64,000 nt of DNA, taken from positions 124,001 to 188,000 of the forward strand of contig LSRY02000004.1 in NCBI GenBank assembly GCA_001643675.2, given 5' to 3'. The notes beneath the pieces were generated by a model. That model was not told the DNA's origin and did no database searches. It worked only from the letters and a program-made list of their open reading frames with translations. Shown piece after piece: positions 16,886-64,000 of the stretch (position 1 is its first letter; every line of letters starts with the position of its first letter). A program made the translations under genes and the position numbers. Source of the stretch: Monocercomonoides exilis PA203 (Eukaryota > Protista > Preaxostyla).

Positions 16886-17289
16886 CATATTTTGATCACA
16901 CTTATAAAATTTATATTTATAAAGTTTTTTTATTTTAGCAAGCTATGAATTGAAGCTTTTTAAGTGTTTAATGACTAATTGGGGGAAAATACGGACTTTC
17001 AAGCTTTTTATGCAAAAAGCGAGAAAAAATTGATTGACTCTTAACTTTGTTTAGCTTTCTCAAAATTCAAAAGAAATTTGATTTTCATATCCTGAAACAG
17101 CATCATTGAAATGAAAACATAAAGAATTGTGACATTTCACGAATGTCGAAAAATGGACTGATTTTTTGTTGTGTTTTTTGATCTCGAAAAGTCAATGAAA
17201 AGTGTATAATTTTTCTATGAAAATGTTTGAAGTGAAATATTTTCCCCCATATATTATTAAAAATAAAACAAATCAATTATCTTGTTTTT

Positions 17290-19163: not shown

Positions 19164-19640
19164 TATGAATAAAGCATTAAAATACAAAAATTTTTTCTGA
19201 AAACAACCTTCCAGAAAACCAACACACAGAAAAAAGTTATAATTTCAAAAAAAATCACGCACATAATTCAAATTCAAAATTTTTTATAAGCTTATAAAGA
19301 GTATTGAAAACAAAAAAATTTTTCTCATCCTTTCTTTGCACAAATTTTTATTGTGATAAAAATTTATTTTCAAAACGAAAAAACGGAAATAATAAAAAAT
19401 AGTTCATCTCAACATGCAGTTTAAACATTGTCAGTTCAAAATATAAAAATTTGGTACACATAGAAGCAGATAGAACATTATGTGAAAATGTCAGTGATTT
19501 TCTTTTTTTTTTTTTAAAAATAGTAATTTAAAATGTATTTATTAATTTGTTTATTTATATTTTTTTTAAATTGAAATAAGATATTCTGTTTATAATATTC
19601 TCATTTTGAAAAAAATTATTGTTCAAAAGAACATCCGAAC

Positions 19641-19715
19641 AAATCAAAAACAAAAACAAAAACAAAAACAAAAAAAAAAACAAAACAAAAAATAAAAATA
19701 AAAAATAAAAAACAA
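19641..19715. repeat. (AAAAAC)n/(AAAAAT)n A-rich simple repeat ~190 bp upstream of the giant ORF
   Basis: Seen directly in the sequence. Confidence 0.85.
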
Positions 19716-19902
19716 GAGCGTATTTTTTTGCAAATAAATATAATTATTCGTTTAAAAGCAACAAATGAGCATAAATTTCATCACAAAAAATATGTATTTC
19801 GTTTTTTGAAATTGAGTGAAATGAATTTGCATATATAATTACTATTTAAAAATTTGATCATTATCTATTTTAATTATTGCCTAACAGCTTAAAGGCAAGC
19901 TA

Positions 19903-19971
19903 ATGAAATTCTACATTCACATTTTTGTATTGTTGAACTTTATATTCATATCGTTTACAAACATCTCAGCT
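19903..19971 (+). other. Predicted signal peptide of the giant protein
   Basis: MKFYIHIFVLLNFIFISFTNISA|HQ has a basic n-region, a hydrophobic h-region and a small residue at -1. Confidence 0.75.
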
Positions 19972-22900
19972 CATCAGAATTATGTTTATGAAGGTCAACA
20001 ACCATATGAAACAAATTTGATTTTCACAAAAACCACAGAAAATTTTCAGTTTTCCCAGAACATATTAAATGAAAAACACATAATTAATAAAAATTGCAAT
20101 GAATACGATGAGAAAATTGAAGATACAAAAGTTTTTGCGACAAATATAATAGCAACTCAAAATCTAAAAACTGTAGAATTTATAACAATCAATTCAACGA
20201 TGCAAATGAAAAAATTACATCTGCTTATAAATTCTTACCAACAATTACTCAATTCTGATGCACTTTCAACAATTTTCTTTGATGGTTGTTCTGTGAGATA
20301 TCTTTTTGAGCTACAACAATCACCAATTTCAACTTCAGGAACAATAATCATACAAAATTTAACTTTTAATTTATGGAACACTAAACAGAGCATATCTCAA
20401 TCTCTTGTTGCTTTTCATGGTGCTGGAGAATTTGTTTTTTGCCAATCTTTACTCAATGAAATAAATTGCCAAAGTGGAACTTCATTTTTTGCAAGTGGCG
20501 AACTTTTCAGTTTCAATCTGAATTCTTTGGGACTTTCTAATTTTACTACAAATAATCATAATGATGCTTTTTTGATTGGAACATCAATAAAATTCAGAAA
20601 ATGGAATAGCCAAACGACAAAAATTGAGAATTGCCACATAACTTCAGTAGATAATCCATTGAATGGGGCTATAGCCCAACTCGATGAATTAAAAGATTCT
20701 ATCGTTTCTAATACAACATTTTCCAAATGCACGACTTCAACGTTTTCAAATTCTAAAAACACGAATTCAGAGGCAAAAGAGTGCACATTGAGTGATATTG
20801 AATTTTTGCAATGCCATTGCTCGGAAAATTCAACGGGTTTTGCTGTGACTAGTCGTCAGAAAGTCTTTGTCATTCGATGCAATATTGTCGGTCCCTTCTA
20901 CAAGAATTATCAAGACTGTTCAGCAAATTCCACTTTGCATTCTTCTTCTTCTTCCTCCTGTTCTTCAAACTATTTATATTCAAACTTATATTCTTTTTTA
21001 CTCTTTCAACTTCCTCAACGAGATTCCAAAATTGTGAATTGTACATTTTGGCCTTCGCAATTGGAATGCTGCAATAAGAACCAAAAACACTTTTTCCTTC
21101 TAACAATTCAATCTTCTGACGAAACATTTAACGTAAGAGATTGCACGTTTGACTTGAAGGAAATCAGTCAGCACCAGAGTAAAAGAAAATATAAGATCAT
21201 TTCACTTATCGGAAATTATGATACAACTGGCACTTTTTGTTTTTTTAATTGCAGTTTTAAGTTGAACTCTTCATTTTCTTTGAACGAAGTATCCAACAAT
21301 TTGTTATCTTCTGCTGCAATCAGCAGTGCATCTTCTTTTCATTTTCTCAAACGCTTCATCAATCTCGACAATTTTTGGATTTCTTCGCATATTATTTCTT
21401 CTTCAGTTAATTGTTCTGAGAACGCATTAGTTTTTCTCTCAGAGCTTATCTTGACACGTGAAGAGAATATTTCAGACATATTTAATTATCAGTTTTTATC
21501 TTCACATTCTTCTTCACTTAACTCAGCATCCACACAATCTGTAATCACTTCTTCATCTTCTTCGCAGCATCGTCCCCACGACATTGAAAATGCAAATGAT
21601 GCCATATTTGTCAGTGATAGCGGGGCAGATGCAAATGGCTGCGGCACAACTGAAAATCCATGCAAAACACTTGAAGGCGCTTTACAGAGCTGTGGCTCTC
21701 CAAGTAATGCCATCTCAATTGAGATACAAGGCACCTTTTCGATAACAACATTTGTAGTACTTGCAGTAAATGCCTCAAATATCGTTGCACCGCTTAAGGG
21801 AACAGAAGTGGCTGCTACAAAACCAGCAAGCGGGAGCAAAGATGCGCTTATTGAAGTTGTTATTGAAACATCAATGACAAATATTACTTTTGTTATCCCT
21901 GGAACAATATCTCCTCTAAAGTCATTTTTTGTGTGCAGTAACAGCACATTAACTCTGTCAAACTGTTCAATAAAGTCAAAGTCATCGGCTTCTCTGTATA
22001 ATCAAAATTCCGCAACAATCTCTAATTTTTTTGAACCTTTTCTGAGACTTACTGGCGGAAGTGCAGTGCTTCAGTCAATGGAACTCGAAAATATTTCGTA
22101 TAGTGCTTCTTCATTTATTGAAATATCCCATTCTTCTTCTTCTGCAAAACTAACACAAGTGACTTTTACGCAAATTGTAACTGCAGCTGATGATTGTGGA
22201 GTTATTTCTGTTCGCAATGGAGGATCTCTTGTTGTTGGGGTAAATTCTTTATTCAATGGAAATAGTAACAGCTTTGAACGACCTTATTTTTTAATCGAGG
22301 ATGCTTCTTATGTGAATATAAGTGATTCACACTTTTCAAAATTTACAACGACATTAACACCAATCATCAAATTTGTGCAAGCAAGAACTTTTTCAATAAA
22401 TAGTTCAGCATTTTCGGAAATTAGTTCCAATTCTGTGAATGGGTCTGTACTTTCTTGGATTGATGGGATCACTTCTAGCGAGTGCAGAATCAATAATTGT
22501 AGCTTTTTGCAGTGTTCAACAACTGGGGATCATACATTTGGTGGAGTGATATACGCAGCACTTTCCCCACAACTGCGACTCAATGTGGAAAGATCGATAT
22601 TTACAACTTGCAGCTCAAGAACGATGGCTGGCTGCATTTTCATTAAAGCAAAAAGTACGTCTTGCAGTTTTTTCATTTCTGGAAACACATATACAGAATG
22701 CACATCCACAATTGCAGGACGAATGGTCATTGATACGAGCAATCTGACAGAATTGCTTTATCAAAAAAATCTACTGAAAGATATTTCAACAGCAGACTAT
22801 GATAAAGAAGAAATTCGAAAAGCATTTTTGGGATATGAAAATGAAGACTACACTGTTCCAATTCCGTTATGCATTTTTATAATGGACAGAAACCAGAACG

Positions 22901-31900: not shown

Positions 31901-34900
31901 GGGATACGCAGTGCTTTGTTGGAATTGAACAAAGTGAAATTGATGCACTTGTACCATTGAAGTACCTGTTTTTCCAGTTGACATCCACCGTATTTGCCGA
32001 TACACTTGGACAAGACAACATTGTCTGCGGGTTTGACAGTTTTCCGTGTAAAACCTTAAGCTCTGCTGTGAGTCGTGCTTCTTCGACAAGCATTAATAAG
32101 ATAACTCTCATTGGAGCATATATGCATGCAACATCTCTGAGAGAAGCGAACATCACATTCTCAGTTATTCCACAAGCCACACCAGCAACTCTTACAGTTG
32201 ACACACCACAAATTTCTAACTCTGCATTTATTATAACATCAGATGTGTCTTTTAACAACTTTAAGATTATTATTAAATCGAACACTTTCTCTTTCTCACT
32301 CTTCAGTGTTGCTTCGTTATCTCTTACGCTGGAAAATTGCTCACTTCAACCATTCAATTCGACCGCATCATTTAACTTTTCCTTAATATCATTGACTGGA
32401 GGCCGTCTTATTCTTAACTCATTTTCTATTGAAGGTCAGCCAAACCCATCTACACATACACTTTTTGCCAATGCAGCGATGATAAATGCGGGTGGTTCGT
32501 CTTCAGTTTATCTGAACAAATGTACACTTCATTCACGCGGCTCACAGGGAAATCAAGGACTTATCCATATGTCAAACTCTTCTTCACTAACATTATCTGA
32601 AACAAACTTTCACAACTTCACAAACTTGGAAGATCCTCTTTTGCAAATTGTCGATCAATCTTCACTTTCCTCAACATCGAGAGTAGTTTTCAAAGATATT
32701 GTTTCTTCAAATAAGCCTCAAATTTATCTTGAAGATGGAGCAACTGCTATCCTTGCTTTTCTCCAGTTTTCTAATTTGAGTCAATCGGCTTCTGCTATAC
32801 AACTGTCAAATGCTCATCAACTAATCTTGGAAAATTGCTCTTTTAACAGAATTCAAAAATTAAATGGCCATGGAGCTTGTATTCTGAGTGAAGAAAGCAT
32901 GGATGTAACAATTAAAAACAACACTTTTGAAAGTACATCTTTAACATCCAATTCACTTTCAAAAGGAGGAGCAATCTTTGTTGAAGTTTCAAGAGATAAT
33001 GGTCGTTGCACAATTTATAATTCGATCATCAGATCGTGCTCTGCTTCACCACTCTATCAAGGGCGTGGAGGTGGAGTTTGCCTTCTTCTATCATCACTAC
33101 TAGGAGGTTACAGCTTCGTTAACAAGACATCATCTCCACTCTTTTCTTCAAATACAGCAGCTTTTGGAAACAATCTTTATATTGAATCTCCAAATTTAAA
33201 AGATTCAATTAAAATTTCTTGCTTTGAAGGATTTAGTGTTGGATCTGATTGGAACGATAATGATGCTCATGGATCCACAAACTCAGATTCTGCACAAAGC
33301 TTTCCACTACGGTATTATTTTATGACTCTTGGGCCAAAAATTTACGTTTCAACCAGTGGAGCTGATGGTGATGTCTGCGGATTCTCCATCATGCCATGCA
33401 AGACTATTCAACAAGCAATACAAAGACAAAGTATTCAACATTGTGATGTGATGGCACTTTCATCTGTTTCTATTGACAGTACATTAAATATAACTACATG
33501 CAATTTAACTCTTCACCCGGATACAGTAGAAACCACTCTGTTTGTTAATTGCACACACGGAACTAACACTTTCCTTGTTCTTGTTGCTTCACAATTGAGT
33601 ATTTTGAATTACACTTTCGATCTTTTATCGATTATTCCTCAAATGAAGTCTGTTTTCCTTGTAAATTCTGGGAATACTTCATTTCACGATTGCAAACTTT
33701 GCTTATCAACCGCTGCATATGTAAAGTGTGCATTTATCTCTGCAAGTGGCGGAGAAATTACACTTATGCAGTTTGCTTTCAAATATGCATCATATTCGAA
33801 TACTGCCAGATTTCAAGATTGTGGCTTAATTGATTTGACAGGAACTGCGTCTTTGTCTTTTATTGGTTGCGAATTATCGCGTCATTATTCATCTGGATCA
33901 CCTCTAATTGACATTTTAAACGAAGCCTCTGTGACATTTTCTGGAACTAACTTTTCTCTCATGGAAAATGTGGCTGCACCTCTGATTTCTGCCTCAAATT
34001 CTGGAAGAATCACCATATTGAATCAGTCCTCTTTCATTAAAATCTCAACAAGTAGTTCTATTTCGTTACTATCGATTCAAGATTCTGCTATCCTTCGAAT
34101 AAGCGGAGATTGCAGAATGGAACAACTTAATCTCAAAGCTCCTGCAATTACTTCAATTCATTCGTCAAGCTGTTCATTAACTCATACAACATTTGTGCAG
34201 GCAACATTGAATGATAATTCACTAATACTATCACAGAGTACGAGTGATATTTCTGTTCAAAGTTCTTCCTTTGAAACAGTTACTCGAGCTGTTGGTGATG
34301 GTTCATGCATTGTTGCTGAATTATCTCAAGGTTTGTGTACTATTGAATCCACAAACTTCTCTCGATGTAATGTGATTAAAGAAGGGGCAGGTGGTGGAGC
34401 AATTTACACTGAGCTCGCAACTCCTGCATCATTTATTGTTCAACAGTGTTCATTTTCTTTATGTACGGCACCTGTTATATCTGATAAATCACAAATCTCA
34501 AAAGGAGGAAAAGGTGGATGCATTTTCATCTCATTAATTGATCCGTCTGTCACGTGGCAGCTTGTGAACACTTCCCTTTCGAAGTATCTGAATAATGATG
34601 CAACATTTGGAAAAATATTGTTTGTACAGTCAACAAATTTATCGAAAACAATTGTGAGGAATCGATTTTCTGGTTTTGACTCACCAGATAGCTGGGATGA
34701 TCTCTGGTACGAAGGATCGGAACTACCAAATCTCTCTGCTTCTTTGCCATTGAAATACTTCTTCTCCGAGATTGAGGGTGCAATATATGTTGACGATGGT
34801 GGAGCAGATTTACAAGTTTGTGGAGACATAAATTATCCCTGCAAAACTTTGAAACACGCATTTACGAGACAAAACAATCTCTCAAGAGCGGCTAAAATTC

Positions 34901-37900
34901 TTTCCAGTGCAAGTCAAAAGGAGCAACTCTCATATGATAGTGGGTCAGTGTGCATAAATGGTTCTCAACCATCAAGCATGATATCTGTTGAACATACTAA
35001 TTCAACGGGGCAGTTTATTTTCAGAATTAATGCACCGTGGATACTTTCTTCTCTCTATTTTCAGATACTGTCAACTGGATCCTCAGTGAATACGATTTTT
35101 TCCGTTGTTAACTCAAATATATTACTTCAACAATGCGTACTGTGCCAACAAGATCCTTCTATTCCTTTTCAAGTGACATTTCTTGATTGCTCAGGTGGAA
35201 CAGCTAATTTTTCTGACTTCTCTTTTTTGTGCACCACGGCAACTGAAGATTCTCTTCTTTATGAAAACAAGCCATTTGTTAAAAGTAGATTAAGTGGAGC
35301 CATTGCCTTCGAGAATTCAGAAGTGATGGCAAGAACTTTGGGAGGAGTATCATTGTTCAGTGCAGAGTCAGGTGGATGCATAAACATGACTGAAGCAGTT
35401 TTTCAGAATTTAAAGATTTCATCTCCTGTGCTTCAAATTGGAGCGAGTTCGAAAGCGAATATGGCTAATTGTCAGTTTATTGATTTATCTGTTACGTCTT
35501 CTGCGGTAATTCAATCAAATACAGGGATATGTAATATTTCTTATTGTGTTTTTTCTTTGGTAAGTTTAAGCTCTAAATCACTAATTGAATTCGCTAATGC
35601 CATTGCAAATGTGGAAGGGAACAAGTTCAATGATATCACTTTATCGTCTGGAAATGGCTCATCTTTGAATATATTAAACGATGGTGCTTATATAACTTTG
35701 AGTAATAACACATTTGCCAGATGCAAAACTCTGGCAGGCAAATCCTGTGGTGGTGCGTTGTACGCAAACATGCAAAGTTTATCTGGTTCAATTGTTTTGC
35801 TTCCATGTAATTTTTCACAATGCAAAGCTGATCCAAACACAGAAGGTAAAGGTGGAGCACTTTGCTTTAATTTTTCAGAACCTTCGTCAAATTACACGAT
35901 TGATTTTTCCTCAACGATGCTAATGACTCAAAATGAGGCAAAAGTTGGCTTTAATATCTTTGTTATATCATTAGATTTATCTGAATCAATCACAACAGCT
36001 CATTTTATAAACTGTCCAACATTATCGTGGGGCTGGAATGATGCTGTTGGAGTTAATTCAGATCTTGATGCACAAGTTATTCCTCTTCAATTTTTCCTTC
36101 TTGAAAAACCTTCTTCTTTGTTTGTTTCATCTTCTATCGCAAAAAGCGATGATTCTCCAATTTGCGGATTTGAAATATATCCTTGTTTAACGCTCAATTA
36201 TATTCTTTCCGAGCGACCTCCATTATCTTCTGATTCAATACGTGCAACAATCATTTTACAATTAATTCAGGATGCTTCAGTAAATTTGGACTCAAAGCAG
36301 CTAATTTTATCTGGGCATTCTTCACAGGCAGAATTAATTGTTAATCAATTCTCAAGCAATGAAAAGCAACTCTTTTCCATTTTGCAATCGTTAACTGTAA
36401 ACGATATTACTTTCATCTTTACAATGAAAAATGAGTTGGAGACTGTTTTTCTGATTAAAGAGGGCTTGTCAAACATTCACTCCTGTTTAATTCAGCCTGC
36501 ATTAGATGTGAGCGGATGGCCCATTTCATTTGCTCATGTAACTGGTGGCCAATTGGAAATTACAAACTTTTCACTCACTGTCGAACCCCTTGCTTCAGAT
36601 GCACTTTTATTAGCTCGATCTTTTATTTCTGTTAACATTTCTGGGAATGTGGTTATTCAATCTTGCAAATTCCATTCACGTTCAACAGGAGAAGCATTTT
36701 TTAAAGCGTTCTGGGGAGGCTCCTTATCAATTCAATCTTCTTCATTCAGAGTTATGAATCAGGTGAAAAAACCTCTTATCTATGCTTCGGCAGCGAGAGA
36801 AGTTATTTTGAATGCTTCAACAATTGAAAAGATTGAATTCATAAATTCATCTGCAATTGAAGCAGTAGAATGTACGAATGAAGTTAAATTGATTTCATCA
36901 AAAATATCATCTTGTAACAGAACGACTGGATCAGCTGCTTGTATAGTCGCGAAAAACAATGCTGGAGATCTTATCATTAACAACAGCATATTTGAGGGCT
37001 GCTCTTCACTTAGCGAGAATACAGATGGAGGAGCTATTCACATAGAGCTTTCTTCTGAAGATGGAGAAATGATATTTTATGATAATAATATTTCATTATG
37101 CAAGTCTAGTCCAGCAAGTAATAATGGAAAAGGAGGAGGAATTTTCCTTCTTCTTTCAACTATAAACGCACGATTCACATTTTCCAACACCACCGGAGCT
37201 CCGTTATGGCTTAATAACGTTGCACATGAAGGAAGAAATCTATTTATTAACGGATCAAATTTATTCGAAAGTCTTTCTGAATCAAACTTTGTTCAATTCA
37301 ATCAACCTTCTGCTTGGGATACAGAAGATGCCAAAGGAATGCAAAACGATAACACTTCAGAAATAATACCAATAAAATATTTCTTTTCAGATATTTCCCA
37401 AATCATACATGTTTCATACAATGGCATGGATTCTTCCGCTTGTGGAGATATTGAATACTCATGCAACAGTTTGCCTTACTCTTTCTCAAGACAAAATTCA
37501 GCAACGAAAAAAAGATATGTGGCAGTTGTGGAGAGAGTGAATGTGAGAGGAGAATTGACATATTCTGATGGAAGTGTTGACATTCACAGCTCCAAGTCTG
37601 CGGACTGGTCTGTTGTTGATGTGGACATGACAACAGGTTCGTGTACGAGTATCTTCAGTGTGGAAGTTCCTTGGACGCTTAAGCTGATAGCATTTACGAT
37701 TGGAGGTGTGCCGGCATCTGTCAAGTCGCTGTTTGGCGTTACGGCGTCGGTTCTCTCTCTGCAAAATACCAAGCTTTGCCAGATCAGTGCAGCAGGATAT
37801 ATGTTTTCTTTTGTCTCGGTAATCAGCGGGTCTGTGAAGATTAGTGTGTTTAATTTTGATGGAGACGTCCGCTTTGCAAATTCTCCCCTCTTTTCTGGAA

Positions 37901-40900
37901 GTCCGATGATTTCTGTGAGTGGAAATGGAACATGTGATATTTCTTCAATGAATCTCCATTTGCGAGGCAGCACAGGAGCAAGCTTCATATCAGTTGTTGA
38001 CGAAGGAGAATTGATGATTAACAATGGAGGTGTTGAGAACATCGATGAAATGGATTCGAGTGTGGTGTGTGTGAATAGCGAGAACAGCACTTTGGATGTA
38101 AATGGGACAGTATTTAGTTCGCTTGTTTTTACAAGCAGCAGTGCTGTTGAGGTGCAAAACATTCGCTCAGGGATTATTCAAAACAGCACTTTTTCGTTTG
38201 TGAGGAAAACAAATGGAAGTGGAAGTTGCCTGGAATGTGCTGTTGGGAAAGGAGAGCTTAAAGTGAATGGGAATCGGTTTGACGGATGCAAAGTCAACTC
38301 ATTAGAAAGTTGTGGAGGGTGCTTGGACTTCACGATGGACAATGCGGCAGGGAAAGTGAGTGTTGATGGCGATGTTTTCATGAACTGCGAGGCGAGCGTG
38401 GCCAATGAAGGCAAAGGCGGTGCGCTGCATATGAATGTGAAGGAAGTGTTCAGCACATTTAGTATTGCAAATAGGACGATTGGAGACTGGTTTGAGAACA
38501 AAGCTTCAAAAGGCAAAAATGTCATGGTTGAATCACCGTCGCTGAGAACATCAGTCACGAACAACAGCTTCTATTCTTTTGCGTATTTTTATTGGGAGAT
38601 GGATGAATTTGAAGGATTTGACAATGGAAAAATTGATCTGTCGATCCCCTTGAAGTACTATCTGCTTGACAGGCCGGAATCTCTTCGTGTGTCATCGTCA
38701 GTTGCAAAAAGAGCAGACACGACAGCATGTGGCTTTGATGAATATCCGTGTGCGACGCTGGCTTATGGGTTGAGCGAGCAACTTAATCCGACGAAGAAAA
38801 TAACGATTATTGGAAGATTGGATCAAGATGCAAGCATTACTGTATCGTCTGGAAACACGACGATTGAAACGCATGCTTCTGGAGGCGAAATGAGCATTTG
38901 CCAAACAGCAAGCGCGGAGAAGCAACTGTTTTTGTGCTCAGCTGCATTTGCGATGAAAAAAGTGTTGTTTTCATTGGCTTCTTCGAAAACATTAGAAACT
39001 GTTATTCGCGTGTCTGATTCCACGACCGTGGTTGAAGGCAGCAGAATTCGGCGAGTATCGGAGAGTGAAAGATATAATTTCACATTTATTGTGTCAACCG
39101 GAGGCACGGTAATTTTGGAACAGTTTTCATTTGATCTTGGGATGCTGACTACGGCAGGCGTTCTGTTTTCTTCGTATCCAATGGTTGATTCAAAAGGAGG
39201 AGAAATCAAAATCCAGAATTCTGTTTTTGAAAAGCTGGGATCAGAAGGATCTCCGCTATTTGTTTCAGAAACCAGCGGGCGTGTGTCTTCAACGAATGTA
39301 ACAATAAATGGGATGAGTGGGCTGACACAGCCTTTGTTTTATGGCAGCGGAACAAGTACTGTGACGATTGCAGGTGTTTCGTCTTCGCCTATTGTTATTA
39401 GTAATATAACATCATCTGCAAACTTAATAGCGATGCAAGATTCAACAAGCTTACTGACAGAGAATGTGAAGTTCAGTGAAATAAGGATGAGTGCGGGAAG
39501 TGCAGTTTTCTGCAATTCGATACAAGATTTGAGGGTGTTGAAAACATCATTTGAAAATGTGAGCAAAAGTGTTGGAAATGGAGCAGCGATTAATGCTGAA
39601 AGCGGCTCTGGAGCAGTTCGGATTGAATCGAATACATTTGTGAGGTGCAGTGCGACTGAGGCGAATGGATGTGGAGGAAGCATATATTGCTATTTGAAGA
39701 GCGACCCGGCGCCACAAACTGCAATGATAATAGAGAACTCATTCACTTCCAGCGCAACAGCCTCGGATTCAGGATATGGAGGAGCGTTTTACTGCTTGAT
39801 AGATGATAGCGACCATTACTTCAACTTACGGAACACGTCCAACACATGGACAGGGAATAACGCGCTTCATGGAAAGAACATTTTTGTTTCGTCAGCAACT
39901 CTTCGGAATTCGCTGGAAAAGCCAGACGTGTTTATGGGCTTTGAGCCATCGAGCTGGAATGAAGAAGATTACGAAGGGTTTGATCTTCCCGACCAGCTGA
40001 CATCGATCCCGTTGAAGTACTTCTTTTCAAACATTGACGTGAATGTATTTGTTGGCGATGCTGGCTTGGATAATGATGCGTGTGGAGACGAGCTGTATCC
40101 ATGCCAGTCGATATCATACTCATTTTCCAGGCAGCAAAAGGAAACACGGAAATGCAGCATTTTGAATTCTGTCAATCAAACGAGAGCTTTGAGCTATGCC
40201 CTTGGGAATGTGAATATAGCAGGTGCGCTATCAGGAACGAAGAGCAGTATTGCTGTGGAGCAGATGTCCGGGAGTGAGACATGCGTATTTGGGATCACTT
40301 TGCCATGGACATTTGAGAACATCTGCTTCAAAGTTATAACAGTTCCGGCGTCTGTGAAATCATTAATTGCAGCAAGCTCGCAGACATCAACGCTGAAACT
40401 TCTGAGGACGTCGCTTCTGCCAAACGCATCCGGTGTATTTGAGTTCAGTTTTTTGAGTGTAACTGCCGGAAATGTTGAAATAAGAGAATTTGGATTTGAG
40501 GTTTCTGAATCTGACCGAATGGGTTGTGTGACGAGAGGCACTGGAGTCATTGAAATAGAAGGGAGTACCTCTCGATGCTTGATTGCAGACAGTACGTTCA
40601 GTTTGAAGGGAAGCGAGGAATCAGGGTTAATTGTAGTGAAGAAATCAGGAGAGCTTAATATTTCTCATTGCAGATTTGCAGAGCTCGGCGGTGTCAATAC
40701 GTCTGTGATTGAAGGATCAGCACTTGGATCGATTCGGATTGGCGAGAATACAAATTTCACGGCTTTTTCTAATTTTGATGGGCCGCTCATTTCGGTTTCG
40801 ACGTGCACGCTTTCTTTTACTGAAACATATTTTATTAATGTGACGGCATGCAAAGTTGCGATTGTCAGAGCAAGTGGGGAAACAGACATTACTTTGAGTA

Positions 40901-43900
40901 ATTCTACTTTTGAAACGATTGAGATGACCACAGCTTCCGCAATTGAGTGTGAAGAAATTGCTTCTACAGTAGTGAGCAAAAACAAATTTACAGAAGTTAA
41001 AAGGAGCAATGGAAACGGATCATGCATTTCAGTTACAACGGGAAACGGGACTATGAATATTGAATCAAATGTGTTTTTGAAGTGCGCTGTAGATGATGAA
41101 AACGCGTGTGGAGGAGGAGTGTACTGCAAACTGAAAAACGACGGAGATGGAAAGATATTGAATATGAATGAGAATTCGTTTGAAAGATGCGCTGTCTCCT
41201 CAACATCGGGGAAGGGGGGTGGAATCTGCATTGACATTGGAGATGTGCAGCGGCATTTCACGATAGTAAATTCTTCCCTTTCCAGCTGGGCAGAAAATAT
41301 TGCGAGATACGGGCGGAACGTTTTTGTGATCTCTCCGAATCTTCGAGAATCGGTAACTTTTAGTTCTGGATTTGTTGGATTTAATCCGCAGATGTGGACT
41401 GAAGATGATTACTATGGAGTTGACACGCGGGACTTATCTACTCTGATTCCTTTGAAGTACTTCTTTTCAAACATTGACGCGAATGTATTTGTCGGCGATG
41501 CTGGCTTGGATAATGATGCGTGTGGAGACGAGCTGTATCCATGTCAGACAATGGAATACTCATTTTCTAGGCAGCAAAAGGAAACACGAAAATGCAGCGT
41601 AATAGCGTCATTGAGCCAGACATCAAAACTGTCATATTCCAGCGGGAGCGTGCAAGTATCTAGCACCGTTTCAGGAGTAAGAAGCAACATTGTTGTGGAA
41701 CAAAGAACTGGAGTGTTTACAGAAATGTTTGAAGTGACCGTTGCATGGACCCTTGAAGATATCTGCTTTAATGTAACATATGTGCCTTCATCTCTAAAAT
41801 CTTTGTTTGCTGTTTGCTCATCTGACGCGACTTTAAAGCTTGAGCGCACAGTTTTGAAGCCGAATGGAACAGAAGCCTTTTTGTTTTGCTTTGTTAGAGC
41901 ATCTTCGGGGATGGTAAATATAAGCCAGTTTTCATTTGAACTATCAGAGTCAGACAGGATGAGCTGCGTAACAAAGGGATGTGGGCTTATAGAAGTTGAT
42001 GGAGAAGACGCAAGGTGCTTAATTAAAGACAGTGAGTTTTCGCGGAAAGGGAGCATTGAATCTGGAATGATTGTTGCCAAAGACAAGGGAGAGATAAATG
42101 TTATTCATTGCGAATTCAAGGAGCTGAGCGATAATGAAGGAGTTGTTATTGAAGGAAGCGCAGGAAGCACGATTAATATTGGGGGTTCTACAAGATTTTC
42201 ATCATTTACCAACAGCAAAATGCCGGCAGTGTCGGTGATATCAAGTGTGCTTGCGATCACAGATACATCCTTTGCGGATATGTCTTCGAAAGAATCGGCA
42301 ATAATATCTGCGACAGGAGAATCTGGAATATCTGCGAGGGCATGCACATTTGCAAATATTGAAATGAGCAAAGCTTCGATAGCAAAGCTTATTGATGTGG
42401 CTTCTGTCTCATTTGCGGAGAATAGCTTTGATAATATCAAAAATGCAATTGGGAATGGGTCTTGTCTTTTCGTCACATCCACGAACGGTACAACTAGCAT
42501 TGAATCCAACACATTTACCCATTGTGTGAACACTTTTGAAGAAGGCTGTGGAGGTAGCGTGCATATCCAGCTGAAGAGCAGCGAGACAAGCGAGATGGCC
42601 TACATACTTGGAAACTCATTTGAAAGATGTGCCGCATCCTCGACAAGAGGAAAAGGAGGTGGATTGTACATTGACGTGATCAATTCGATGCGGTATTTTA
42701 AGATTACGAACACTTCGATTTCGAGATGGGCAGAGAACACAGCAAAATACGGGCAAAATGTATTTGTTGCATCTCCAGATCTTCGGGCTTCTGTAACTTC
42801 TGATTCTGCATTTGTTGGGTTCAGTCCGTTGGCGTGGCCGGAAGACGATTATTATGGAACCGATACTCGAGACTTGTCGACTTTGATTCCGCTGAAATAC
42901 TTTTTCTCTTCGCTTGTACCCTATGTTTATGTTGGCGATGTTGGAAAAGACAATGATGCATGTGGTGACCAATCATATCCTTGCAATTCCATCGATTATT
43001 CTTTCTCAAGACAAAATTCAGCAACGAAAAAAAGATATGTGGCAGTTGTGGAGAGAGTGAATGTGAGAGGAGAATTGACATATTCTGATGGAAGTGTTGA
43101 CATTCACAGCTCCAAGTCTGCGGACTGGTCTGTTGTTGATGTGGACATGACAACAGGTTCGTGTACGAGTATCTTCAGTGTGGAAGTTCCTTGGACGCTT
43201 AAGCTGATAGCATTTACGATTGGAGGTGTGCCGGCATCTGTCAAGTCGCTGTTTGGCGTTACGGCGTCGGTTCTCTCTCTGCAAAATACCAAGCTTTGCC
43301 AGATCAGTGCAGCAGGATATATGTTTTCTTTTGTCTCGGTAATCAGCGGGTCTGTGAAGATTAGTGTGTTTAATTTTGATGGAGACGTCCGCTTTGCAAA
43401 TTCTCCCCTCTTTTCTGGAAGTCCGATGATTTCTGTGAGTGGAAATGGAACATGTGATATTTCTTCAATGAATCTCCATTTGCGAGGCAGCACAGGAGCA
43501 AGCTTCATATCAGTTGTTGACGAAGGAGAATTGATGATTAACAATGGAGGTGTTGAGAACATCGATGAAATGGATTCGAGTGTGGTGTGTGTGAATAGCG
43601 AGAACAGCACTTTGGATGTAAATGGGACAGTATTTAGTTCGCTTGTTTTTACAAGCAGCAGTGCTGTTGAGGTGCAAAACATTCGCTCAGGGATTATTCA
43701 AAACAGCACTTTTTCGTTTGTGAGGAAAACAAATGGAAGTGGAAGTTGCCTGGAATGTGCTGTTGGGAAAGGAGAGCTTAAAGTGAATGGGAATCGGTTT
43801 GACGGATGCAAAGTCAACTCATTAGAAAGTTGTGGAGGGTGCTTGGACTTCACGATGGACAATGCGGCAGGGAAAGTGAGTGTTGATGGCGATGTTTTCA

Positions 43901-46900
43901 TGAACTGCGAGGCGAGCGTGGCCAATGAAGGCAAAGGCGGTGCGCTGCATATGAATGTGAAGGAAGTGTTCAGCACATTTAGTATTGCAAATAGGACGAT
44001 TGGAGACTGGTTTGAGAACAAAGCTTCAAAAGGCAAAAATGTCATGGTTGAATCACCGTCGCTGAGAACATCAGTCACGAACAACAGCTTCTATTCTTTT
44101 GCGTATTTTTATTGGGAGATGGATGAATTTGAAGGATTTGACAATGGAAAAATTGATCTGTCGATCCCCTTGAAGTACTATCTGCTTGACAGGCCGGAAT
44201 CTCTTCGTGTGTCATCGTCAGTTGCAAAAAGAGCAGACACGACAGCATGTGGCTTTGATGAATATCCGTGTGCGACGCTGGCTTATGGGTTGAGCGAGCA
44301 ACTTAATCCGACGAAGAAAATAACGATTATTGGAAGATTGGATCAAGATGCAAGCATTACTGTATCGTCTGGAAACACGACGATTGAAACGCATGCTTCT
44401 GGAGGCGAAATGAGCATTTGCCAAACAGCAAGCGCGGAGAAGCAACTGTTTTTGTGCTCAGCTGCATTTGCGATGAAAAAAGTGTTGTTTTCATTGGCTT
44501 CTTCGAAAACATTAGAAACTGTTATTCGCGTGTCTGATTCCACGACCGTGGTTGAAGGCAGCAGAATTCGGCGAGTATCGGAGAGTGAAAGATATAATTT
44601 CACATTTATTGTGTCAACCGGAGGCACGGTAATTTTGGAACAGTTTTCATTTGATCTTGGGATGCTGACTACGGCAGGCGTTCTGTTTTCTTCGTATCCA
44701 ATGGTTGATTCAAAAGGAGGAGAAATCAAAATCCAGAATTCTGTTTTTGAAAAGCTGGGATCAGAAGGATCTCCGCTATTTGTTTCAGAAACCAGCGGGC
44801 GTGTGTCTTCAACGAATGTAACAATAAATGGGATGAGTGGGCTGACACAGCCTTTGTTTTATGGCAGCGGAACAAGTACTGTGACGATTGCAGGTGTTTC
44901 GTCTTCGCCTATTGTTATTAGTAATATAACATCATCTGCAAACTTAATAGCGATGCAAGATTCAACAAGCTTACTGACAGAGAATGTGAAGTTCAGTGAA
45001 ATAAGGATGAGTGCGGGAAGTGCAGTTTTCTGCAATTCGATACAAGATTTGAGGGTGTTGAAAACATCATTTGAAAATGTGAGCAAAAGTGTTGGAAATG
45101 GAGCAGCGATTAATGCTGAAAGCGGCTCTGGAGCAGTTCGGATTGAATCGAATACATTTGTGAGGTGCAGTGCGACTGAGGCGAATGGATGTGGAGGAAG
45201 CATATATTGCTATTTGAAGAGCGACCCGGCGCCACAAACTGCAATGATAATAGAGAACTCATTCACTTCCAGCGCAACAGCCTCGGATTCAGGATATGGA
45301 GGAGCGTTTTACTGCTTGATAGATGATAGCGACCATTACTTCAACTTACGGAACACGTCCAACACATGGACAGGGAATAACGCGCTTCATGGAAAGAACA
45401 TTTTTGTTTCGTCAGCAACTCTTCGGAATTCGCTGGAAAAGCCAGACGTGTTTATGGGCTTTGAGCCATCGAGCTGGAATGAAGAAGATTACGAAGGGTT
45501 TGATCTTCCCGACCAGCTGACATCGATCCCGTTGAAGTACTTCTTTTCAAACATTGACGTGAATGTATTTGTTGGCGATGCTGGCTTGGATAATGATGCG
45601 TGTGGAGACGAGCTGTATCCATGCCAGTCGATATCATACTCATTTTCCAGGCAGCAAAAGGAAACACGGAAATGCAGCATTTTGAATTCTGTCAATCAAA
45701 CGAGAGCTTTGAGCTATGCCCTTGGGAATGTGAATATAGCAGGTGCGCTATCAGGAACGAAGAGCAGTATTGCTGTGGAGCAGATGTCCGGGAGTGAGAC
45801 ATGCGTATTTGGGATCACTTTGCCATGGACATTTGAGAACATCTGCTTCAAAGTTATAACAGTTCCGGCGTCTGTGAAATCATTAATTGCAGCAAGCTCG
45901 CAGACATCAACGCTGAAACTTCTGAGGACGTCGCTTCTGCCAAACGCATCCGGTGTATTTGAGTTCAGTTTTTTGAGTGTAACTGCCGGAAATGTTGAAA
46001 TAAGAGAATTTGGATTTGAGGTTTCTGAATCTGACCGAATGGGTTGTGTGACGAGAGGCACTGGAGTCATTGAAATAGAAGGGAGTACCTCTCGATGCTT
46101 GATTGCAGACAGTACGTTCAGTTTGAAGGGAAGCGAGGAATCAGGGTTAATTGTAGTGAAGAAATCAGGAGAGCTTAATATTTCTCATTGCAGATTTGCA
46201 GAGCTCGGCGGTGTCAATACGTCTGTGATTGAAGGATCAGCACTTGGATCGATTCGGATTGGCGAGAATACAAATTTCACGGCTTTTTCTAATTTTGATG
46301 GGCCGCTCATTTCGGTTTCGACGTGCACGCTTTCTTTTACTGAAACATATTTTATTAATGTGACGGCATGCAAAGTTGCGATTGTCAGAGCAAGTGGGGA
46401 AACAGACATTACTTTGAGTAATTCTACTTTTGAAACGATTGAGATGACCACAGCTTCCGCAATTGAGTGTGAAGAAATTGCTTCTACAGTAGTGAGCAAA
46501 AACAAATTTACAGAAGTTAAAAGGAGCAATGGAAACGGATCATGCATTTCAGTTACAACGGGAAACGGGACTATGAATATTGAATCAAATGTGTTTTTGA
46601 AGTGCGCTGTAGATGATGAAAACGCGTGTGGAGGAGGAGTGTACTGCAAACTGAAAAACGACGGAGATGGAAAGATATTGAATATGAATGAGAATTCGTT
46701 TGAAAGATGCGCTGTCTCCTCAACATCGGGGAAGGGGGGTGGAATCTGCATTGACATTGGAGATGTGCAGCGGCATTTCACGATAGTAAATTCTTCCCTT
46801 TCCAGCTGGGCAGAAAATATTGCGAGATACGGGCGGAACGTTTTTGTGATCTCTCCGAATCTTCGAGAATCGGTAACTTTTAGTTCTGGATTTGTTGGAT

Positions 46901-49900
46901 TTAATCCGCAGATGTGGACTGAAGATGATTACTATGGAGTTGACACGCGGGACTTATCTACTCTGATTCCTTTGAAGTACTTCTTTTCAAACATTGACGC
47001 GAATGTATTTGTCGGCGATGCTGGCTTGGATAATGATGCGTGTGGAGACGAGCTGTATCCATGTCAGACAATGGAATACTCATTTTCTAGGCAGCAAAAG
47101 GAAACACGAAAATGCAGCGTAATAGCGTCATTGAGCCAGACATCAAAACTGTCATATTCCAGCGGGAGCGTGCAAGTATCTAGCACCGTTTCAGGAGTAA
47201 GAAGCAACATTGTTGTGGAACAAAGAACTGGAGTGTTTACAGAAATGTTTGAAGTGACCGTTGCATGGACCCTTGAAGATATCTGCTTTAATGTAACATA
47301 TGTGCCTTCATCTCTAAAATCTTTGTTTGCTGTTTGCTCATCTGACGCGACTTTAAAGCTTGAGCGCACAGTTTTGAAGCCGAATGGAACAGAAGCCTTT
47401 TTGTTTTGCTTTGTTAGAGCATCTTCGGGGATGGTAAATATAAGCCAGTTTTCATTTGAACTATCAGAGTCAGACAGGATGAGCTGCGTAACAAAGGGAT
47501 GTGGGCTTATAGAAGTTGATGGAGAAGACGCAAGGTGCTTAATTAAAGACAGTGAGTTTTCGCGGAAAGGGAGCATTGAATCTGGAATGATTGTTGCCAA
47601 AGACAAGGGAGAGATAAATGTTATTCATTGCGAATTCAAGGAGCTGAGCGATAATGAAGGAGTTGTTATTGAAGGAAGCGCAGGAAGCACGATTAATATT
47701 GGGGGTTCTACAAGATTTTCATCATTTACCAACAGCAAAATGCCGGCAGTGTCGGTGATATCAAGTGTGCTTGCGATCACAGATACATCCTTTGCGGATA
47801 TGTCTTCGAAAGAATCGGCAATAATATCTGCGACAGGAGAATCTGGAATATCTGCGAGGGCATGCACATTTGCAAATATTGAAATGAGCAAAGCTTCGAT
47901 AGCAAAGCTTATTGATGTGGCTTCTGTCTCATTTGCGGAGAATAGCTTTGATAATATCAAAAATGCAATTGGGAATGGGTCTTGTCTTTTCGTCACATCC
48001 ACGAACGGTACAACTAGCATTGAATCCAACACATTTACCCATTGTGTGAACACTTTTGAAGAAGGCTGTGGAGGTAGCGTGCATATCCAGCTGAAGAGCA
48101 GCGAGACAAGCGAGATGGCCTACATACTTGGAAACTCATTTGAAAGATGTGCCGCATCCTCGACAAGAGGAAAAGGAGGTGGATTGTACATTGACGTGAT
48201 CAATTCGATGCGGTATTTTAAGATTACGAACACTTCGATTTCGAGATGGGCAGAGAACACAGCAAAATACGGGCAAAATGTATTTGTTGCATCTCCAGAT
48301 CTTCGGGCTTCTGTAACTTCTGATTCTGCATTTGTTGGGTTCAGTCCGTTGGCGTGGCCGGAAGACGATTATTATGGAACCGATACTCGAGACTTGTCGA
48401 CTTTGATTCCGCTGAAATACTTTTTCTCTTCGCTTGTACCCTATGTTTATGTTGGCGATGTTGGAAAAGACAATGATGCATGTGGTGACCAATCATATCC
48501 TTGCAATTCCATCGATTATTCTTTCTCAAGACAAGCGAAAGAGGAAAAGAGTTGTGTTGTATTGAATAAAACCATATTAACAAGAAAATTGCATTATTTA
48601 TCTGAAGATACTTCAAGTATTAATATTAAAAGCGTTTTATCAGGAGAAAATTCTTTTGTAGAATTTAACTTTATGACTGATGAAGTTTGCGAGGAATGCG
48701 TTGTTGTGGAAGTTACATGGAGAGTATTATATGTCACATTTAAGGTTGCAAATGTGCCTGTTTCTTTGACATCGTTGATAAAGATTTCTTCTTCTTTTTT
48801 ATCTTCAATATTACTATCAAATTGCAAAATATGTCCAAAATCTGAAACGGAATCCTTTAATTCCAGCTTAATATCAGTTGAAGGAGGAAAAGTTTCTTTG
48901 GATAAATTCTCGTATGATTTGGGATCATCTTCGTCTGTTCAACCTATCTTCAATGGATGTTCAATGTATGATTTAAAAGGAGGTCAAACAATATTGGAAA
49001 ATGCAATTGTGGAAAAAAGAAGCTCGGTAGAAATTAGTTTAATGTCAATAGATCTTGACGGGGTATTTACAATCGCTAATTCAACTTTGAGGGACTTTCC
49101 TGATATTAAACAACCTTTGATATCTGCATATGATCGAGCACAATTGTTGATACAAGGAACAGAACTGCTTCCTGTTACATTTATGCAAATTGCAAGTGCA
49201 TCATCGTCTTTAATATTTCTTTCAGGTTCTTCATCTGCAACTTTAACGTATGTTACATTTCAAAATTTGATATTTGGAGATCGTTCAATTATTTTCTTGA
49301 GCGCATCAACTTCATTTGCATGCACACAGCTTCTTGCCACTGGAATCACTTTTGCAAACGGATCTGTTTTTCAAGCAAATAATGCAAGAAGTATTCAAAT
49401 TTTAAATTCTCAGTTTTCAAATATTCTTAGGACTGCAGGAAATGGCTCTTGCATTTGGATAGAAGCAGGAACAGACCCTTCTGTCTCGTTGACCAATCCT
49501 TCACATCAAATAGCAAATTCAAACTTTACTCAATGCCGAGTAACAGAGCAGCTTAGAGGAGGAGGTGCTGTTTATTCATTACTTGGATATGGAACTTCTG
49601 CAAGTAACTACGTGAATTGGCAGATGAGCGGGTGCTTTTTCAGTGAATGTGAAGCTCCAGTTACGGGCGGCATCATTTACTCAGCAGACGATAGACGTAG
49701 TGATCATTTAAAAGGTTATACACAATATGGAAAAGGAGGTGGAGTATTCCTTTATTTACTTGATTCGAATGCCACTTTCACATTTGATTCAAGAATGTCT
49801 TTCTCAAATAACAAAGCAGATTTTGGAAAAGATATCTTTATTTCAACGCCTTGTTTAGCTGATTCTGTTCGACCTAGCCGTTTTCCTTGGTTCAGCGATG

Positions 49901-64000: not shown

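What the first reader, a model, noticed from the sequence alone, without database searches (positions are those of the whole stretch)
21601..64000. Beads-on-a-string array of >=31 Cys-capped Pmp-like beta-helix modules
Seen: each 381-536-aa unit runs (V/I)YVS..G.D...CGx4PC.T, then Ser/Ile/Phe/Asn-rich coils, G(D/N)GSC, FxxC..GGA(I/V)Y, FxxC.A..GKGGG(I/V)YL, N.A..G.(D/N)(I/L)F(V/I)SS.NL and G.D...IPLKYF, with many N-x-S/T sequons. Established: YVS..G.D....P..T is the N-cap of pectin-lyase-like parallel beta-helices, and GGA(I/L/V) plus FxxN repeats typify chlamydial Pmp adhesins. Inference: a disulfide-stabilised, glycosylated rod or fibre, roughly >=200 nm if each module is ~7 nm, acting as a glycocalyx filament, holdfast or bacteria-capturing adhesin.
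Basis: partly seen in the sequence, partly recalled or inferred. Interest (0 to 1): 0.85.

Follow-up and report, generated by a model that had tools for sequence, protein, structure and literature searches.

The report
Giant 34-module beta-helix surface protein
The window holds most of one uninterrupted, transcribed gene of the mitochondrion-less gut protist Monocercomonoides exilis; it encodes a 16,659-residue membrane-anchored protein made of 34 separately capped beta-helix domains in a row, probably a quarter-micrometre surface filament or adhesin, and I could not find it in the public protein collections searched.

Summary
One open frame runs from an ATG at window 19903 through the window end to a stop 5.9 kb further on. 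It encodes 16,659 aa: a signal-peptide-like start, a 540-aa head of unassigned fold, 34 modules of 338-541 aa (31 complete in the window), a membrane-proximal region, one membrane helix and a 410-aa low-complexity tail.

A single module folds with pLDDT 93.8 as a right-handed parallel beta-helix (Z 24 to Vag8, Z 23 to pertactin). Each module has its own N-cap carrying an invariant Cys pair. Its conserved C-terminal third aligns with Chlam_PMP-type coils, but FxxC replaces FxxN. No catalytic-type residue is conserved.

RNA-seq contigs from one study cover the gene but not the upstream spacer.

The gene is the largest member found of an oxymonad family (Monocercomonoides, Blattamonas, Streblomastix). 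This scan has already met that family on other DNA, as 2-5 kaa receptors with half-kinase tails. This gene, like the other giants, has no kinase tail.

The central modules arose by in-gene amplification; the latest step is an exact 5.5-kb, four-module duplication.

The function (adhesive or spacer filament) is inferred, not shown.

The parts
19903..19971 (+). Start codon and signal-peptide-like hydrophobic N-terminus (aa 1-23). It is the first ATG after the in-frame stop at 19882-19884.
   Evidence: sequence read directly; no signal-peptide predictor was available
19972..21591 (+). N-terminal 'head' region (aa 24-563), rich in Cys and sequons; fold unassigned.
   Evidence: No Pfam match. hhalign to the module profile is not significant. 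Atlas feature search gives only weak leads to beta-helix clusters.
21592..63687 (+). Modules 1-31, each a complete capped beta-helix domain of 380-541 aa.
   Evidence: profile self-search, boundaries, alignment A1
63688..64000 (+). Start of module 32. The gene runs on outside the window: modules 32-34 at L001:688-4380, membrane-proximal region at L001:4381-5577, TM helix at about L001:5578-5649, tail to the stop at L001:6880.
33322..34770 (+). Module 10, the module modelled alone: right-handed parallel beta-helix with an N-cap helix and about 15-16 rungs.
40033..42906 (+). Modules 15+16, modelled together: two separate beta-helices joined by a short, confidently modelled linker. Their relative orientation is uncertain.
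37480..48534 (+). Exact in-frame tandem duplication: 37480-43014 is identical to 43000-48534 (5,535 nt, period 5,520 nt = 1,840 aa = four modules, 15-nt overlap). It is found only in this gene. GC is 42-44% here against about 36% elsewhere in the gene.

Best explanation
This is a single intron-less gene of Monocercomonoides exilis for a 16,659-aa type I membrane protein.

Shown: the open frame; the 34-module anatomy; the beta-helix fold of the module; the single C-terminal membrane helix with a basic cluster on its far side; RNA-seq contigs over the gene; and kinship with a large oxymonad family.

Inferred mechanism: the N-terminal hydrophobic peptide sends the chain into the ER. Each module folds on its own into a capped right-handed beta-helix about 7-8 nm long. 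The invariant Cys pair in the CGx4PC N-cap and the stacked FxxC cysteines stabilise it, and N-glycans are added. The chain is then held in the plasma membrane by its one helix, so the 34 domains plus the head form a segmented filament that could reach roughly 0.25-0.3 micrometre from the cell.

In each module the C-terminal third (the Pmp-type GGA and GKGGG coils and the C-cap) is conserved and acts as scaffold and junction. The N-terminal two-thirds vary in sequence and in number of rungs. That gives many different lateral faces for multivalent, non-enzymatic binding, most plausibly to bacteria, mucus or other gut surfaces, or for a protective spacer coat.

The gene grew by tandem duplication of whole central modules on a conserved membrane-proximal scaffold that it shares with other giant paralogues. 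Its disordered tail of acidic, Ser-rich and then strongly basic stretches has no kinase remnant, so it is not built like the half-kinase receptors of the same family.
For: - Open frame and ends.
- Modules and motifs.
- Fold: AF2 pLDDT 93.8, pTM 0.91. All Foldseek PDB hits are beta-helix proteins. VIA-align gives Z 24.3 to Vag8, 23.0 to pertactin, 19.9 to PfbA and 18.4 to Fap2. Atlas gives TM 0.74-0.78 over 420-449 residues to bacterial wall-anchored proteins carrying NosD, Chlam_PMP or Beta_helix.
- Separate domains: in the di-module model (pLDDT 90.7, pTM 0.72) solved chains align to one module at a time. Two-domain chains fit both modules only at rmsd 28-38 A.
- Pmp-type coils: hhalign 95%, E 4e-8.
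- No conserved catalytic-type residues: only D15, R35 and K397 reach 60%.
- One TM-grade segment, followed by RRRNRKKR.
- Transcription: four RNA runs of one study hold 96-98% of the sampled words of 57001-63000. Their contigs cover from about 20330 onwards and nothing between 16501 and 20300.
- Family: 5,610 representatives at E<=1e-3. All 20 hits looked up by name (18 from the top 150) are M. exilis, Blattamonas, Streblomastix or unnamed metagenome contigs.
- Tails: relatives of 2-5 kaa have half-kinase tails; the giants do not.
- Growth pattern.
Against: - There is no protein-level or localisation evidence, and no ligand is known.
- No signal-peptide predictor was run.
- RNA contigs start about 430 nt downstream of the ATG in all four runs, so the 5' end and the use of the signal peptide are unconfirmed.
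- All the RNA evidence comes from one study and from assembled contigs, which cannot show one full-length 50-kb transcript.
- The relative orientation of neighbouring modules is uncertain (pTM drops to 0.72) and no coordinates could be read, so the extended length is an upper bound.
- Disulfides and glycosylation are not shown.
- The exact 5.5-kb duplication could be an assembly artefact. That would make 30 modules rather than 34.
Confidence: 0.6

Rival explanations
1. It is a ligand-sensing receptor like its half-kinase-tailed paralogues. The long ectodomain samples ligands and the cytoplasmic tail passes on a signal, for example by recruiting partners or by release after cleavage; its basic clusters resemble nuclear-localisation signals.
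For: It shares the module type and the membrane-proximal element with the kinase-tailed receptors. The 410-aa tail is long and carries acidic and strongly basic clusters. The tails of two other giants have no clear sequence similarity to it (best E 0.039) but show the same pattern.
Against: The tail has no kinase remnant or any other Pfam domain. It has no similarity to the tails of 150+ relatives. It has no NPx[YWF], YxxPhi or di-leucine motif. Thirty-four modules is far more than a binding site needs.
Confidence: 0.15
2. It is a passive structural coat or spacer: a glycocalyx fibre that keeps bacteria, enzymes or host surfaces at a distance, with no specific binding.
For: It is very long, has a modest sequon excess (301 vs 244 +/- 13) and a protease-resistant type of fold. 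Module sequences have drifted to about 25% identity, as if only the fold were under constraint.
Against: Structural neighbours are largely adhesins and receptor-binding tailspikes. The family diversifies its variable parts strongly, and other members look like receptors. One gene copy among hundreds of family genes seems little for a bulk coat.
Confidence: 0.15
3. It is a tethered array of carbohydrate-active enzymes (polysaccharide lyases, hydrolases or epimerases), since most solved beta-helix proteins are such enzymes.
For: Many fold matches are PL6 lyases, AlgG/AlgE epimerases, pectin methylesterase and phage depolymerases.
Against: No acidic, basic or His column is conserved in the body of the module. 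Only D15 in the cap, R35 and K397 in GKGGG reach 60%. There are no Pfam or PDB sequence matches to enzyme families. Sequence identity to the enzymes is 7-13%.
Confidence: 0.04
4. It is not a working gene: a repeat array, pseudogene or assembly artefact that happens to be open.
For: I did not find the protein in either protein collection. The published annotation noted that 'unclassified repeats' overlap expanded families (PMC8767320). An exact 5.5-kb duplication sits in a nanopore-based assembly.
Against: A 49,995-nt frame (16,665 codons; 16,659 aa from the ATG) without a stop in 36%-GC DNA cannot persist by chance. The modules are 25% identical yet keep every structural motif. The frame has proper ends: a signal-like start, a TM helix and a stop. 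RNA contigs cover the gene and not the spacer.
Confidence: 0.03

Closest known systems
Oxymonad modular beta-helix surface proteins. In the M. exilis literature the kinase-tailed members are counted only as the 'tyrosine kinase-like' largest gene family (PMC6759080, PMC8767320). Earlier reports of this scan describe them as giant beta-helix receptors with dead-kinase tails.
   Same: The same N-capped module is recognised by the module profile in 150+ relatives, at 5-16 modules each. They also share the membrane-proximal element and a single TM helix. The same three genera carry them: Monocercomonoides, Blattamonas and Streblomastix.
   Different: This gene has 34 modules, more than twice any relative in the collections (up to 16). 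The largest other open frames among family matches in this genome are 10,375, 9,080 and 8,211 aa, against 16,665 codons here. It has no half-kinase tail. The tail shows no clear sequence similarity even to those of the other giants; the best pair is E 0.039.
Trichomonad Pmp-like surface proteins (TvPmp; Handrich et al. 2019, PMC6701047)
   Same: Both are eukaryotic (metamonad) type I membrane proteins whose ectodomain carries Pmp-type GGA[ILV] coils, with a TM helix in place of the bacterial autotransporter. Expressing a TvPmp in another trichomonad (Tetratrichomonas gallinarum) increased its adherence to host cells.
   Different: According to that paper TvPmps have FxxN+GGA repeats along the protein, a conserved ATPITK motif and NPx[YWF] tail motifs. 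Here FxxN is replaced by FxxC, there are only about two such coils per 450-aa module, and ATPITK and NPx[YWF] are absent. The architecture here is a chain of separately capped domains. Direct homology to TvPmps was not tested, because no trichomonad sequence was in hand.
Chlamydial polymorphic membrane proteins (Pmps) and other autotransporter beta-helix adhesins (pertactin, Vag8, Fap2)
   Same: Same right-handed beta-helix fold (Z 18-24). The GGA[ILV]-containing coils align with a Chlam_PMP-bearing protein. In Pmps these motifs are known to form the coils of the helix (abstracts of PMC11166332 and PMC10715098).
   Different: Those are bacterial proteins with one continuous helix, exported through a C-terminal beta-barrel. 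This one is eukaryotic, anchored by a TM helix, and built of 34 discrete capped helices. Pfam Chlam_PMP reaches only 4 of 31 modules.
Gram-positive and archaeal wall-anchored 'adhesin-like' beta-helix proteins (PfbA; ESM Atlas clusters with LPXTG, InlB B-repeat, NosD/Chlam_PMP/Beta_helix)
   Same: These are the best whole-module structural matches: TM 0.74-0.78 over 420-449 residues and PfbA at Z 19.9. They are surface-exposed, non-enzymatic binders.
   Different: They carry one beta-helix per protein, combined with Ig-like or repeat stalks, and are prokaryotic. Apart from one weak hit, no sequence-level match was found.

Membership tests
Right-handed parallel beta-helix (pectin-lyase-like fold) | Stack of three-stranded rungs that superposes on solved beta-helix proteins | tested here: met
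   AF2 pLDDT 93.8. VIA-align Z 24.3, rmsd 4.0 A over 382 residues to Vag8; Z 23.0 to pertactin; 157 chains at Z>=8, with beta-helix proteins throughout the 50 rows shown. Foldseek hits are all beta-helix proteins.
Right-handed parallel beta-helix (pectin-lyase-like fold) | N-terminal cap (strand plus helix) closing the helix end, with the YVS..G.D...P..T-type motif | tested here: inconclusive
   The model has strand 6-9 and helix 29-34 ahead of the first rung, and the motif is present in nearly all modules. No Pfam cap-bearing family such as DUF1565 matched by sequence. The link between this motif and known caps rests on recall.
Chlamydial Pmp (autotransporter adhesins) | Repeated GGA[ILV] tetrapeptides | tested here: met
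   30 observed against 0.6 in shuffles; GG[AGSC][ILVM] 66 against 4.8, about two per module.
Chlamydial Pmp (autotransporter adhesins) | Repeated FxxN tetrapeptides paired with GGA[ILV] | tested here: not met
   FxxN 51 against 64.8 +/- 7.3 expected. FxxC takes its place (84 against 27).
Chlamydial Pmp (autotransporter adhesins) | Match to Pfam PF02415 (Chlam_PMP repeat) | tested here: inconclusive
   4 of 31 modules match, best E 5.7e-5. One hit of 22.5 bits (cut-off 20.6) in 8.3 kaa. hhalign to a PF02415-bearing metagenome protein gives 95%, E 4e-8, over 116 columns.
Chlamydial Pmp (autotransporter adhesins) | Pmp middle domain and C-terminal autotransporter beta-barrel | tested here: not met
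   No such Pfam match anywhere. The C-terminus is a single TM helix plus a cytoplasmic tail.
Trichomonad Pmp-like surface proteins | C-terminal transmembrane domain replacing the autotransporter | tested here: met
   One hydrophobic segment at aa 16222-16252, followed by a basic cluster.
Trichomonad Pmp-like surface proteins | Conserved ATPITK motif and NPx[YWF] endocytic motif in the tail (PMC6701047) | tested here: not met
   ATPITK occurs 0 times; there is no NPx[YWF] in the tail.
Trichomonad Pmp-like surface proteins | Sequence homology to TvPmp proteins | not tested
The word-indexed searches returned none.
Oxymonad modular beta-helix surface-protein family | Chain of the same N-capped ~450-aa module | tested here: met
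   The profile of the modules finds 455 representatives at E<=1e-30, with up to 38 matched stretches each. N-caps counted per relative: 5-16.
Oxymonad modular beta-helix surface-protein family | Shared membrane-proximal element followed by one TM helix | tested here: met
   aa 15827-15930 matches 30 relatives at the corresponding place, just before their TM helix.
Oxymonad modular beta-helix surface-protein family (kinase-tailed receptor subgroup) | Cytoplasmic half-kinase (C-lobe) remnant | tested here: not met
   Relatives P0034, P0151 and P0043 match PK_Tyr_Ser-Thr positions 161-257, and 72 of 154 relatives have such a tail. This protein's tail has no kinase match.
Beta-helix polysaccharide lyases, hydrolases and epimerases | Conserved catalytic acidic or basic residues on the helix face | tested here: not met
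   No D/E/K/R/H column reaches 60% in the helix body. The only ones are D15 (cap), R35 and K397 (GKGGG).

The most novel reading that the evidence does not exclude
Oxymonads build quarter-micrometre, segmented poly-beta-helix filaments on their plasma membrane. This would be a eukaryotic counterpart of bacterial giant adhesins, made of dozens of separately capped beta-helix domains instead of Ig-like repeats or one continuous helix. The filaments lengthen or shorten by whole-module tandem duplication on a conserved membrane-proximal scaffold. This gene would be the longest such filament. It would capture or hold bacteria, or anchor the cell in the gut, which bears on how oxymonads attach their well-known bacterial partners.
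Probability: 0.3. Interest if true: 0.75.

Novelty: new variant of a known kind. Interest (0 to 1): 0.6.

Why it matters
M. exilis is the model eukaryote without mitochondria, and its cell-surface biology is essentially undescribed. The genome papers I read mention this family only as 'tyrosine kinases' or not at all.

A transcribed 50-kb single-exon gene that I could not find in the protein collections shows that the published proteome misses some of its largest surface components.

The architecture is also unusual. Beta-helix adhesins are normally one helix per protein, whereas here 34 complete capped helices are strung together, with a visible record of how the array grew.

If the protein is a surface filament, it gives a concrete molecular candidate for protist-bacterium attachment in oxymonads. 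It is also a natural example of a very long modular beta-helix fibre.

Tried and rejected
- Pfam on the whole gene, in pieces and module by module, is almost blank: only weak Chlam_PMP hits and one Beta_helix hit.
- A profile search of PDB sequences found nothing.
- Word-indexed homologue searches with the module profile, the di-module profile and a 10,000-aa piece gave only 1, 1 and 2 hits. They say little about range.
- The search for related loci could not use the module alignment because it has no conserved 7-10-column stretch.
- Head domain: no Pfam match; hhalign to the module profile is not significant (3.5%); Atlas gives only weak beta-helix leads. It is left unassigned.
- Tail: no domain, no similarity to relatives, none of the endocytic motifs searched (NPx[YWF], YxxPhi, [DE]xxxL[LI]).
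- Pfam on the Blattamonas and M. exilis giants P0004 and P0152 gave nothing.
- Annotation status: looking up the neighbouring 1,705-aa ORF found no record.
- Inter-module geometry: the di-module model is confident locally, but no coordinates or PAE are returned. A search for chains spanning both modules found only high-rmsd fits. Rod versus flexible chain stays open.
- The 'joints' reported by read laying at 20963/21507 are 24-nt matches of unrelated low-complexity contigs. I rejected them as splice evidence.
- Tandem Repeats Finder sees nothing because the modules are too diverged and the 5.5-kb period exceeds its limit.
- I did not run complex prediction, because I make no binding claim.
Full report
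**What is there.**
The window is G000:C36:124001-188000 of an 82,301,135-base, 101-contig assembly. That size and contig count match the published nanopore assembly of Monocercomonoides exilis PA203 (PMC8767320). Relatives of the gene carry MONOS_ locus tags, and one of them lies on a contig of the same length as C36.

In the standard code, one frame is open from 19885 to the last full codon of the window (14,705 codons). The genome search reports the whole open frame as 16,665 codons. I fetched the next 6 kb (L001). The frame ends at L001:6880, giving 16,659 aa from the first ATG at window 19903.

The protein starts with a short hydrophobic, signal-peptide-like segment. It contains only one other TM-grade hydrophobic segment, at aa 16222-16252. 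That segment is followed at once by a run of Arg/Lys and then a 410-aa tail rich in Glu, Ser and Arg. By the positive-inside rule this topology puts about 16,200 residues outside the cell. This is an inference.

**The modules.**
An iterated profile search of the protein against itself finds 34 consecutive units. They start at aa 567 and end at about 15826, with lengths of 338-541 aa. Thirty-one are complete in the window, and the 32nd begins at 63688.

- an N-cap, (V/I)YVS..G.D...CGx4PC.T(L/I)..A, with the two Cys invariant;
- G.GSC;
- two coils of the form FxxC...GGA(I/V)Y and FxxC.A...GKGGG(I/V)YL;
- N.A..G.N.FV.S.NL;
- a final IPLKYF.

Against shuffles, GGA[ILV] occurs 30 times (0.6 expected), GKGG 22 (0.1), FxxC 84 (27) and sequons 301 (244 +/- 13). 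FxxN is not enriched (51 vs 65).

Conservation is highest in the cap and in the last third of the module. Length differences sit in the middle as whole-rung insertions and deletions. The Cys at reference positions 349 and 381, in the two FxxC coils, are gained and lost together (25 modules have both, 4 have one). That fits a stacked pair on neighbouring rungs. No D/E/K/R/H column is conserved in the helix body.

**Fold.**
With the 31-module alignment as input, AlphaFold2 models module 10 at mean pLDDT 93.8 and pTM 0.91. The model is all short strands, with one helix after the cap motif.
- Foldseek against the PDB returns only right-handed beta-helix proteins: PfbA, AlgG, PL6 lyases, pectin methylesterase and tailspikes.
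- The Foldseek-independent search gives Z 24.3 (382 residues, 4.0 A) to the Bordetella autotransporter Vag8. It gives Z 23.0 to pertactin, 19.9 to the pneumococcal adhesin PfbA and 18.4 to Fap2, with 157 chains at Z>=8.
- In the ESM Atlas the best whole-module matches are bacterial wall-anchored proteins whose clusters carry NosD, Chlam_PMP and Beta_helix (TM 0.74-0.78 over 420-449 residues).

The strand pattern indicates about 15-16 rungs, or roughly 7-8 nm per module at 0.48 nm per rung. This is an inference.

**One helix or beads?**
I modelled modules 15+16 together, using an alignment of all neighbouring pairs (A2). The result has pLDDT 90.7 with a confidently modelled junction, but pTM falls to 0.72. 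Solved chains align to one module at a time. Chains with two beta-helix domains fit both modules only at rmsd 28-38 A, and long single helices such as Fap2 do not span the pair.

So each module is a separately capped helix joined by a short linker, which fits 'beads on a string'. The angle between beads and their stiffness could not be measured, because no coordinates are returned. About 0.25-0.3 micrometre for 34 modules is therefore an upper bound.

**How Pmp-like is it?**
Pfam's Chlam_PMP model reaches only 4 of 31 modules, and one hit is above threshold in 8.3 kaa. A profile-profile comparison with P0155, a metagenome protein that carries PF02415, is significant: 95% probability, E 4e-8, 116 columns, 30% identity. 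It lines up that protein's F..N...GGAIYA coils with the F..C...GGAIY and GKGGAIYL coils here.

The conserved third of each module is therefore made of Pmp-type coils in which Cys replaces the ladder Asn. The protein lacks the Pmp middle domain and the autotransporter barrel. It also lacks the ATPITK and NPx[YWF] motifs that define the trichomonad Pmp-like proteins in PMC6701047. I do not file it as a Pmp. It works like one in fold and probably in exposure.

**Family.**
A profile search of 1.84 billion representatives finds 5,610 proteins at E<=1e-3 and 455 at E<=1e-30. The 20 hits I looked up by name are from M. exilis, Blattamonas nauphoetae (one is named 'Adhesin-like protein' by UniProt), Streblomastix strix, or unnamed metagenome contigs. 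I cannot see the weaker hits, so the range beyond oxymonads is open.

Relatives of 2-5 kaa carry 5-8 modules, a TM helix and a tail that matches only the C-lobe of protein kinases. This is the family the genome papers count as 'tyrosine kinase-like'. Earlier reports of this scan describe it as beta-helix receptors with dead-kinase tails.

The annotated giants (6.6-8.0 kaa, 13-16 modules) have non-kinase tails, as this gene does. The first 100 residues after the last module are shared across the family. The tail shows no clear sequence similarity to any other.

With 34 modules and 16,665 codons, this is the largest open frame among the family's matches in the genome. The next are 10,375, 9,080 and 8,211.

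**How the array grew.**
Central modules M02-M23 mostly find their best matches inside the same gene; M07 and M21 are exceptions. M01 and most of the membrane-proximal modules M24-M34 match modules of the giants MONOS_955, MONOS_5407 and MONOS_3825 better, roughly in order. The last module matches the last module of MONOS_955. This points to a conserved proximal scaffold plus in-gene amplification.

The newest step is an exact duplication: 37480-43014 equals 43000-48534 (5,535 nt; period 5,520 nt = four modules; 15-nt overlap at the joint). It has no further copy in the genome. Within the block, M15 and M16 are 54% identical, which marks an older duplication.

The block has 42-44% GC against about 36% in the rest of the gene. 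I cannot explain this. The exact copy should be checked against raw long reads before it is trusted.

**Is it expressed and annotated?**
Four RNA-seq runs of one 2024 study hold 96-98% of the sampled words of 57001-63000. I laid them on 16501-22500. Their contigs, up to 11 kb on this stretch and 24 kb overall, cover from 20326-20375 onwards in all four runs. They leave the AT-rich spacer 16501-20300 empty.

That contrast argues for transcription rather than DNA carry-over. It also leaves the first 430 nt of the ORF uncovered. Contig depth falls towards that end (about 8 against 13-26), so the gap may simply reflect low coverage. The 5' end is unresolved.

The protein itself did not appear in either protein collection. 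The best match of any retrieved relative is 36% identical, although another gene of the same contig is present. I report it as 'not found', probably unannotated.

**Literature.**
Searches for oxymonads with adhesin or beta-helix terms, and reading of the three Preaxostyla genome papers, found no description of these proteins as beta-helix surface proteins.

**Verdict.**
Its 'Pmp' label holds only at the level of the coils. Its functional part (filament, holdfast or adhesin) remains an inference that fits the topology, the fold neighbours and the lack of catalytic residues.

The family has been met before in this scan on other DNA. New here are the kinase-less giant with 34 modules, the evidence that each module is a separately capped helix, the link to Chlam_PMP coils, and the growth pattern.

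Noticed in passing
window 37480-48534: Exact in-frame tandem duplication of four modules (5,535 identical nt, period 5,520, 15-nt overlap at the joint). The block has 42-44% GC against about 36% in the rest of the gene. There is no other copy in the genome. It could be very recent or an assembly artefact; the GC step is unexplained.
   Followed up: partly
window 19903-20330: In all four RNA runs the contigs begin at 20326-20375, about 430 nt after the ATG, while the upstream spacer is empty. The cause could be falling coverage at the 5' end of a 50-kb mRNA or a downstream start; it is unresolved.
   Followed up: partly
window 10025-15139 (- strand): A 1,705-aa ATG-started ORF with 50-53% GC in a roughly 36% GC neighbourhood. 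It is Ser/Pro-rich (17.5% Ser), has no Pfam match, and no exact record was found.
   Followed up: partly
window 894-2630 (+): An open frame with a TPX2 domain (E 6e-8), an ordinary eukaryotic spindle-protein gene. It helped to show that the window is eukaryotic.
   Followed up: no
window 19301-19900: The stretch just upstream of the start codon is extremely AT-rich (GC 9-29% per 100 nt) and contains the repeats that read laying skipped (19490-19527, 19636-19719).
   Followed up: no
L001:3367-5577 (outside the window): Module 34 is truncated: it has the cap but no GGA/GKGGG coils. After it come a ~100-aa element shared with about 30 relatives, a Ser-rich linker, a further ~180-aa region, and an acidic Pro-rich juxtamembrane stretch.
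   Followed up: partly
L001:5650-6879 and tails of P0001, P0003: The cytoplasmic tails of three giants show no clear sequence similarity to this one (best E 0.039), but all combine acidic/Ser-rich stretches with a strong Lys/Arg cluster near the C-terminus. This could be a shared function, such as lipid binding or nuclear targeting after cleavage, or just composition.
   Followed up: no
G000:C22:881660-901876, C58:1288366-1295091, C25:1375689-1377092: Other giant open frames of the same family (10,375, 9,080 and 8,211 aa) carry full modules. Some exceed the lengths of the annotated proteins retrieved (up to 7,986 aa), so they too may be under-annotated.
   Followed up: no
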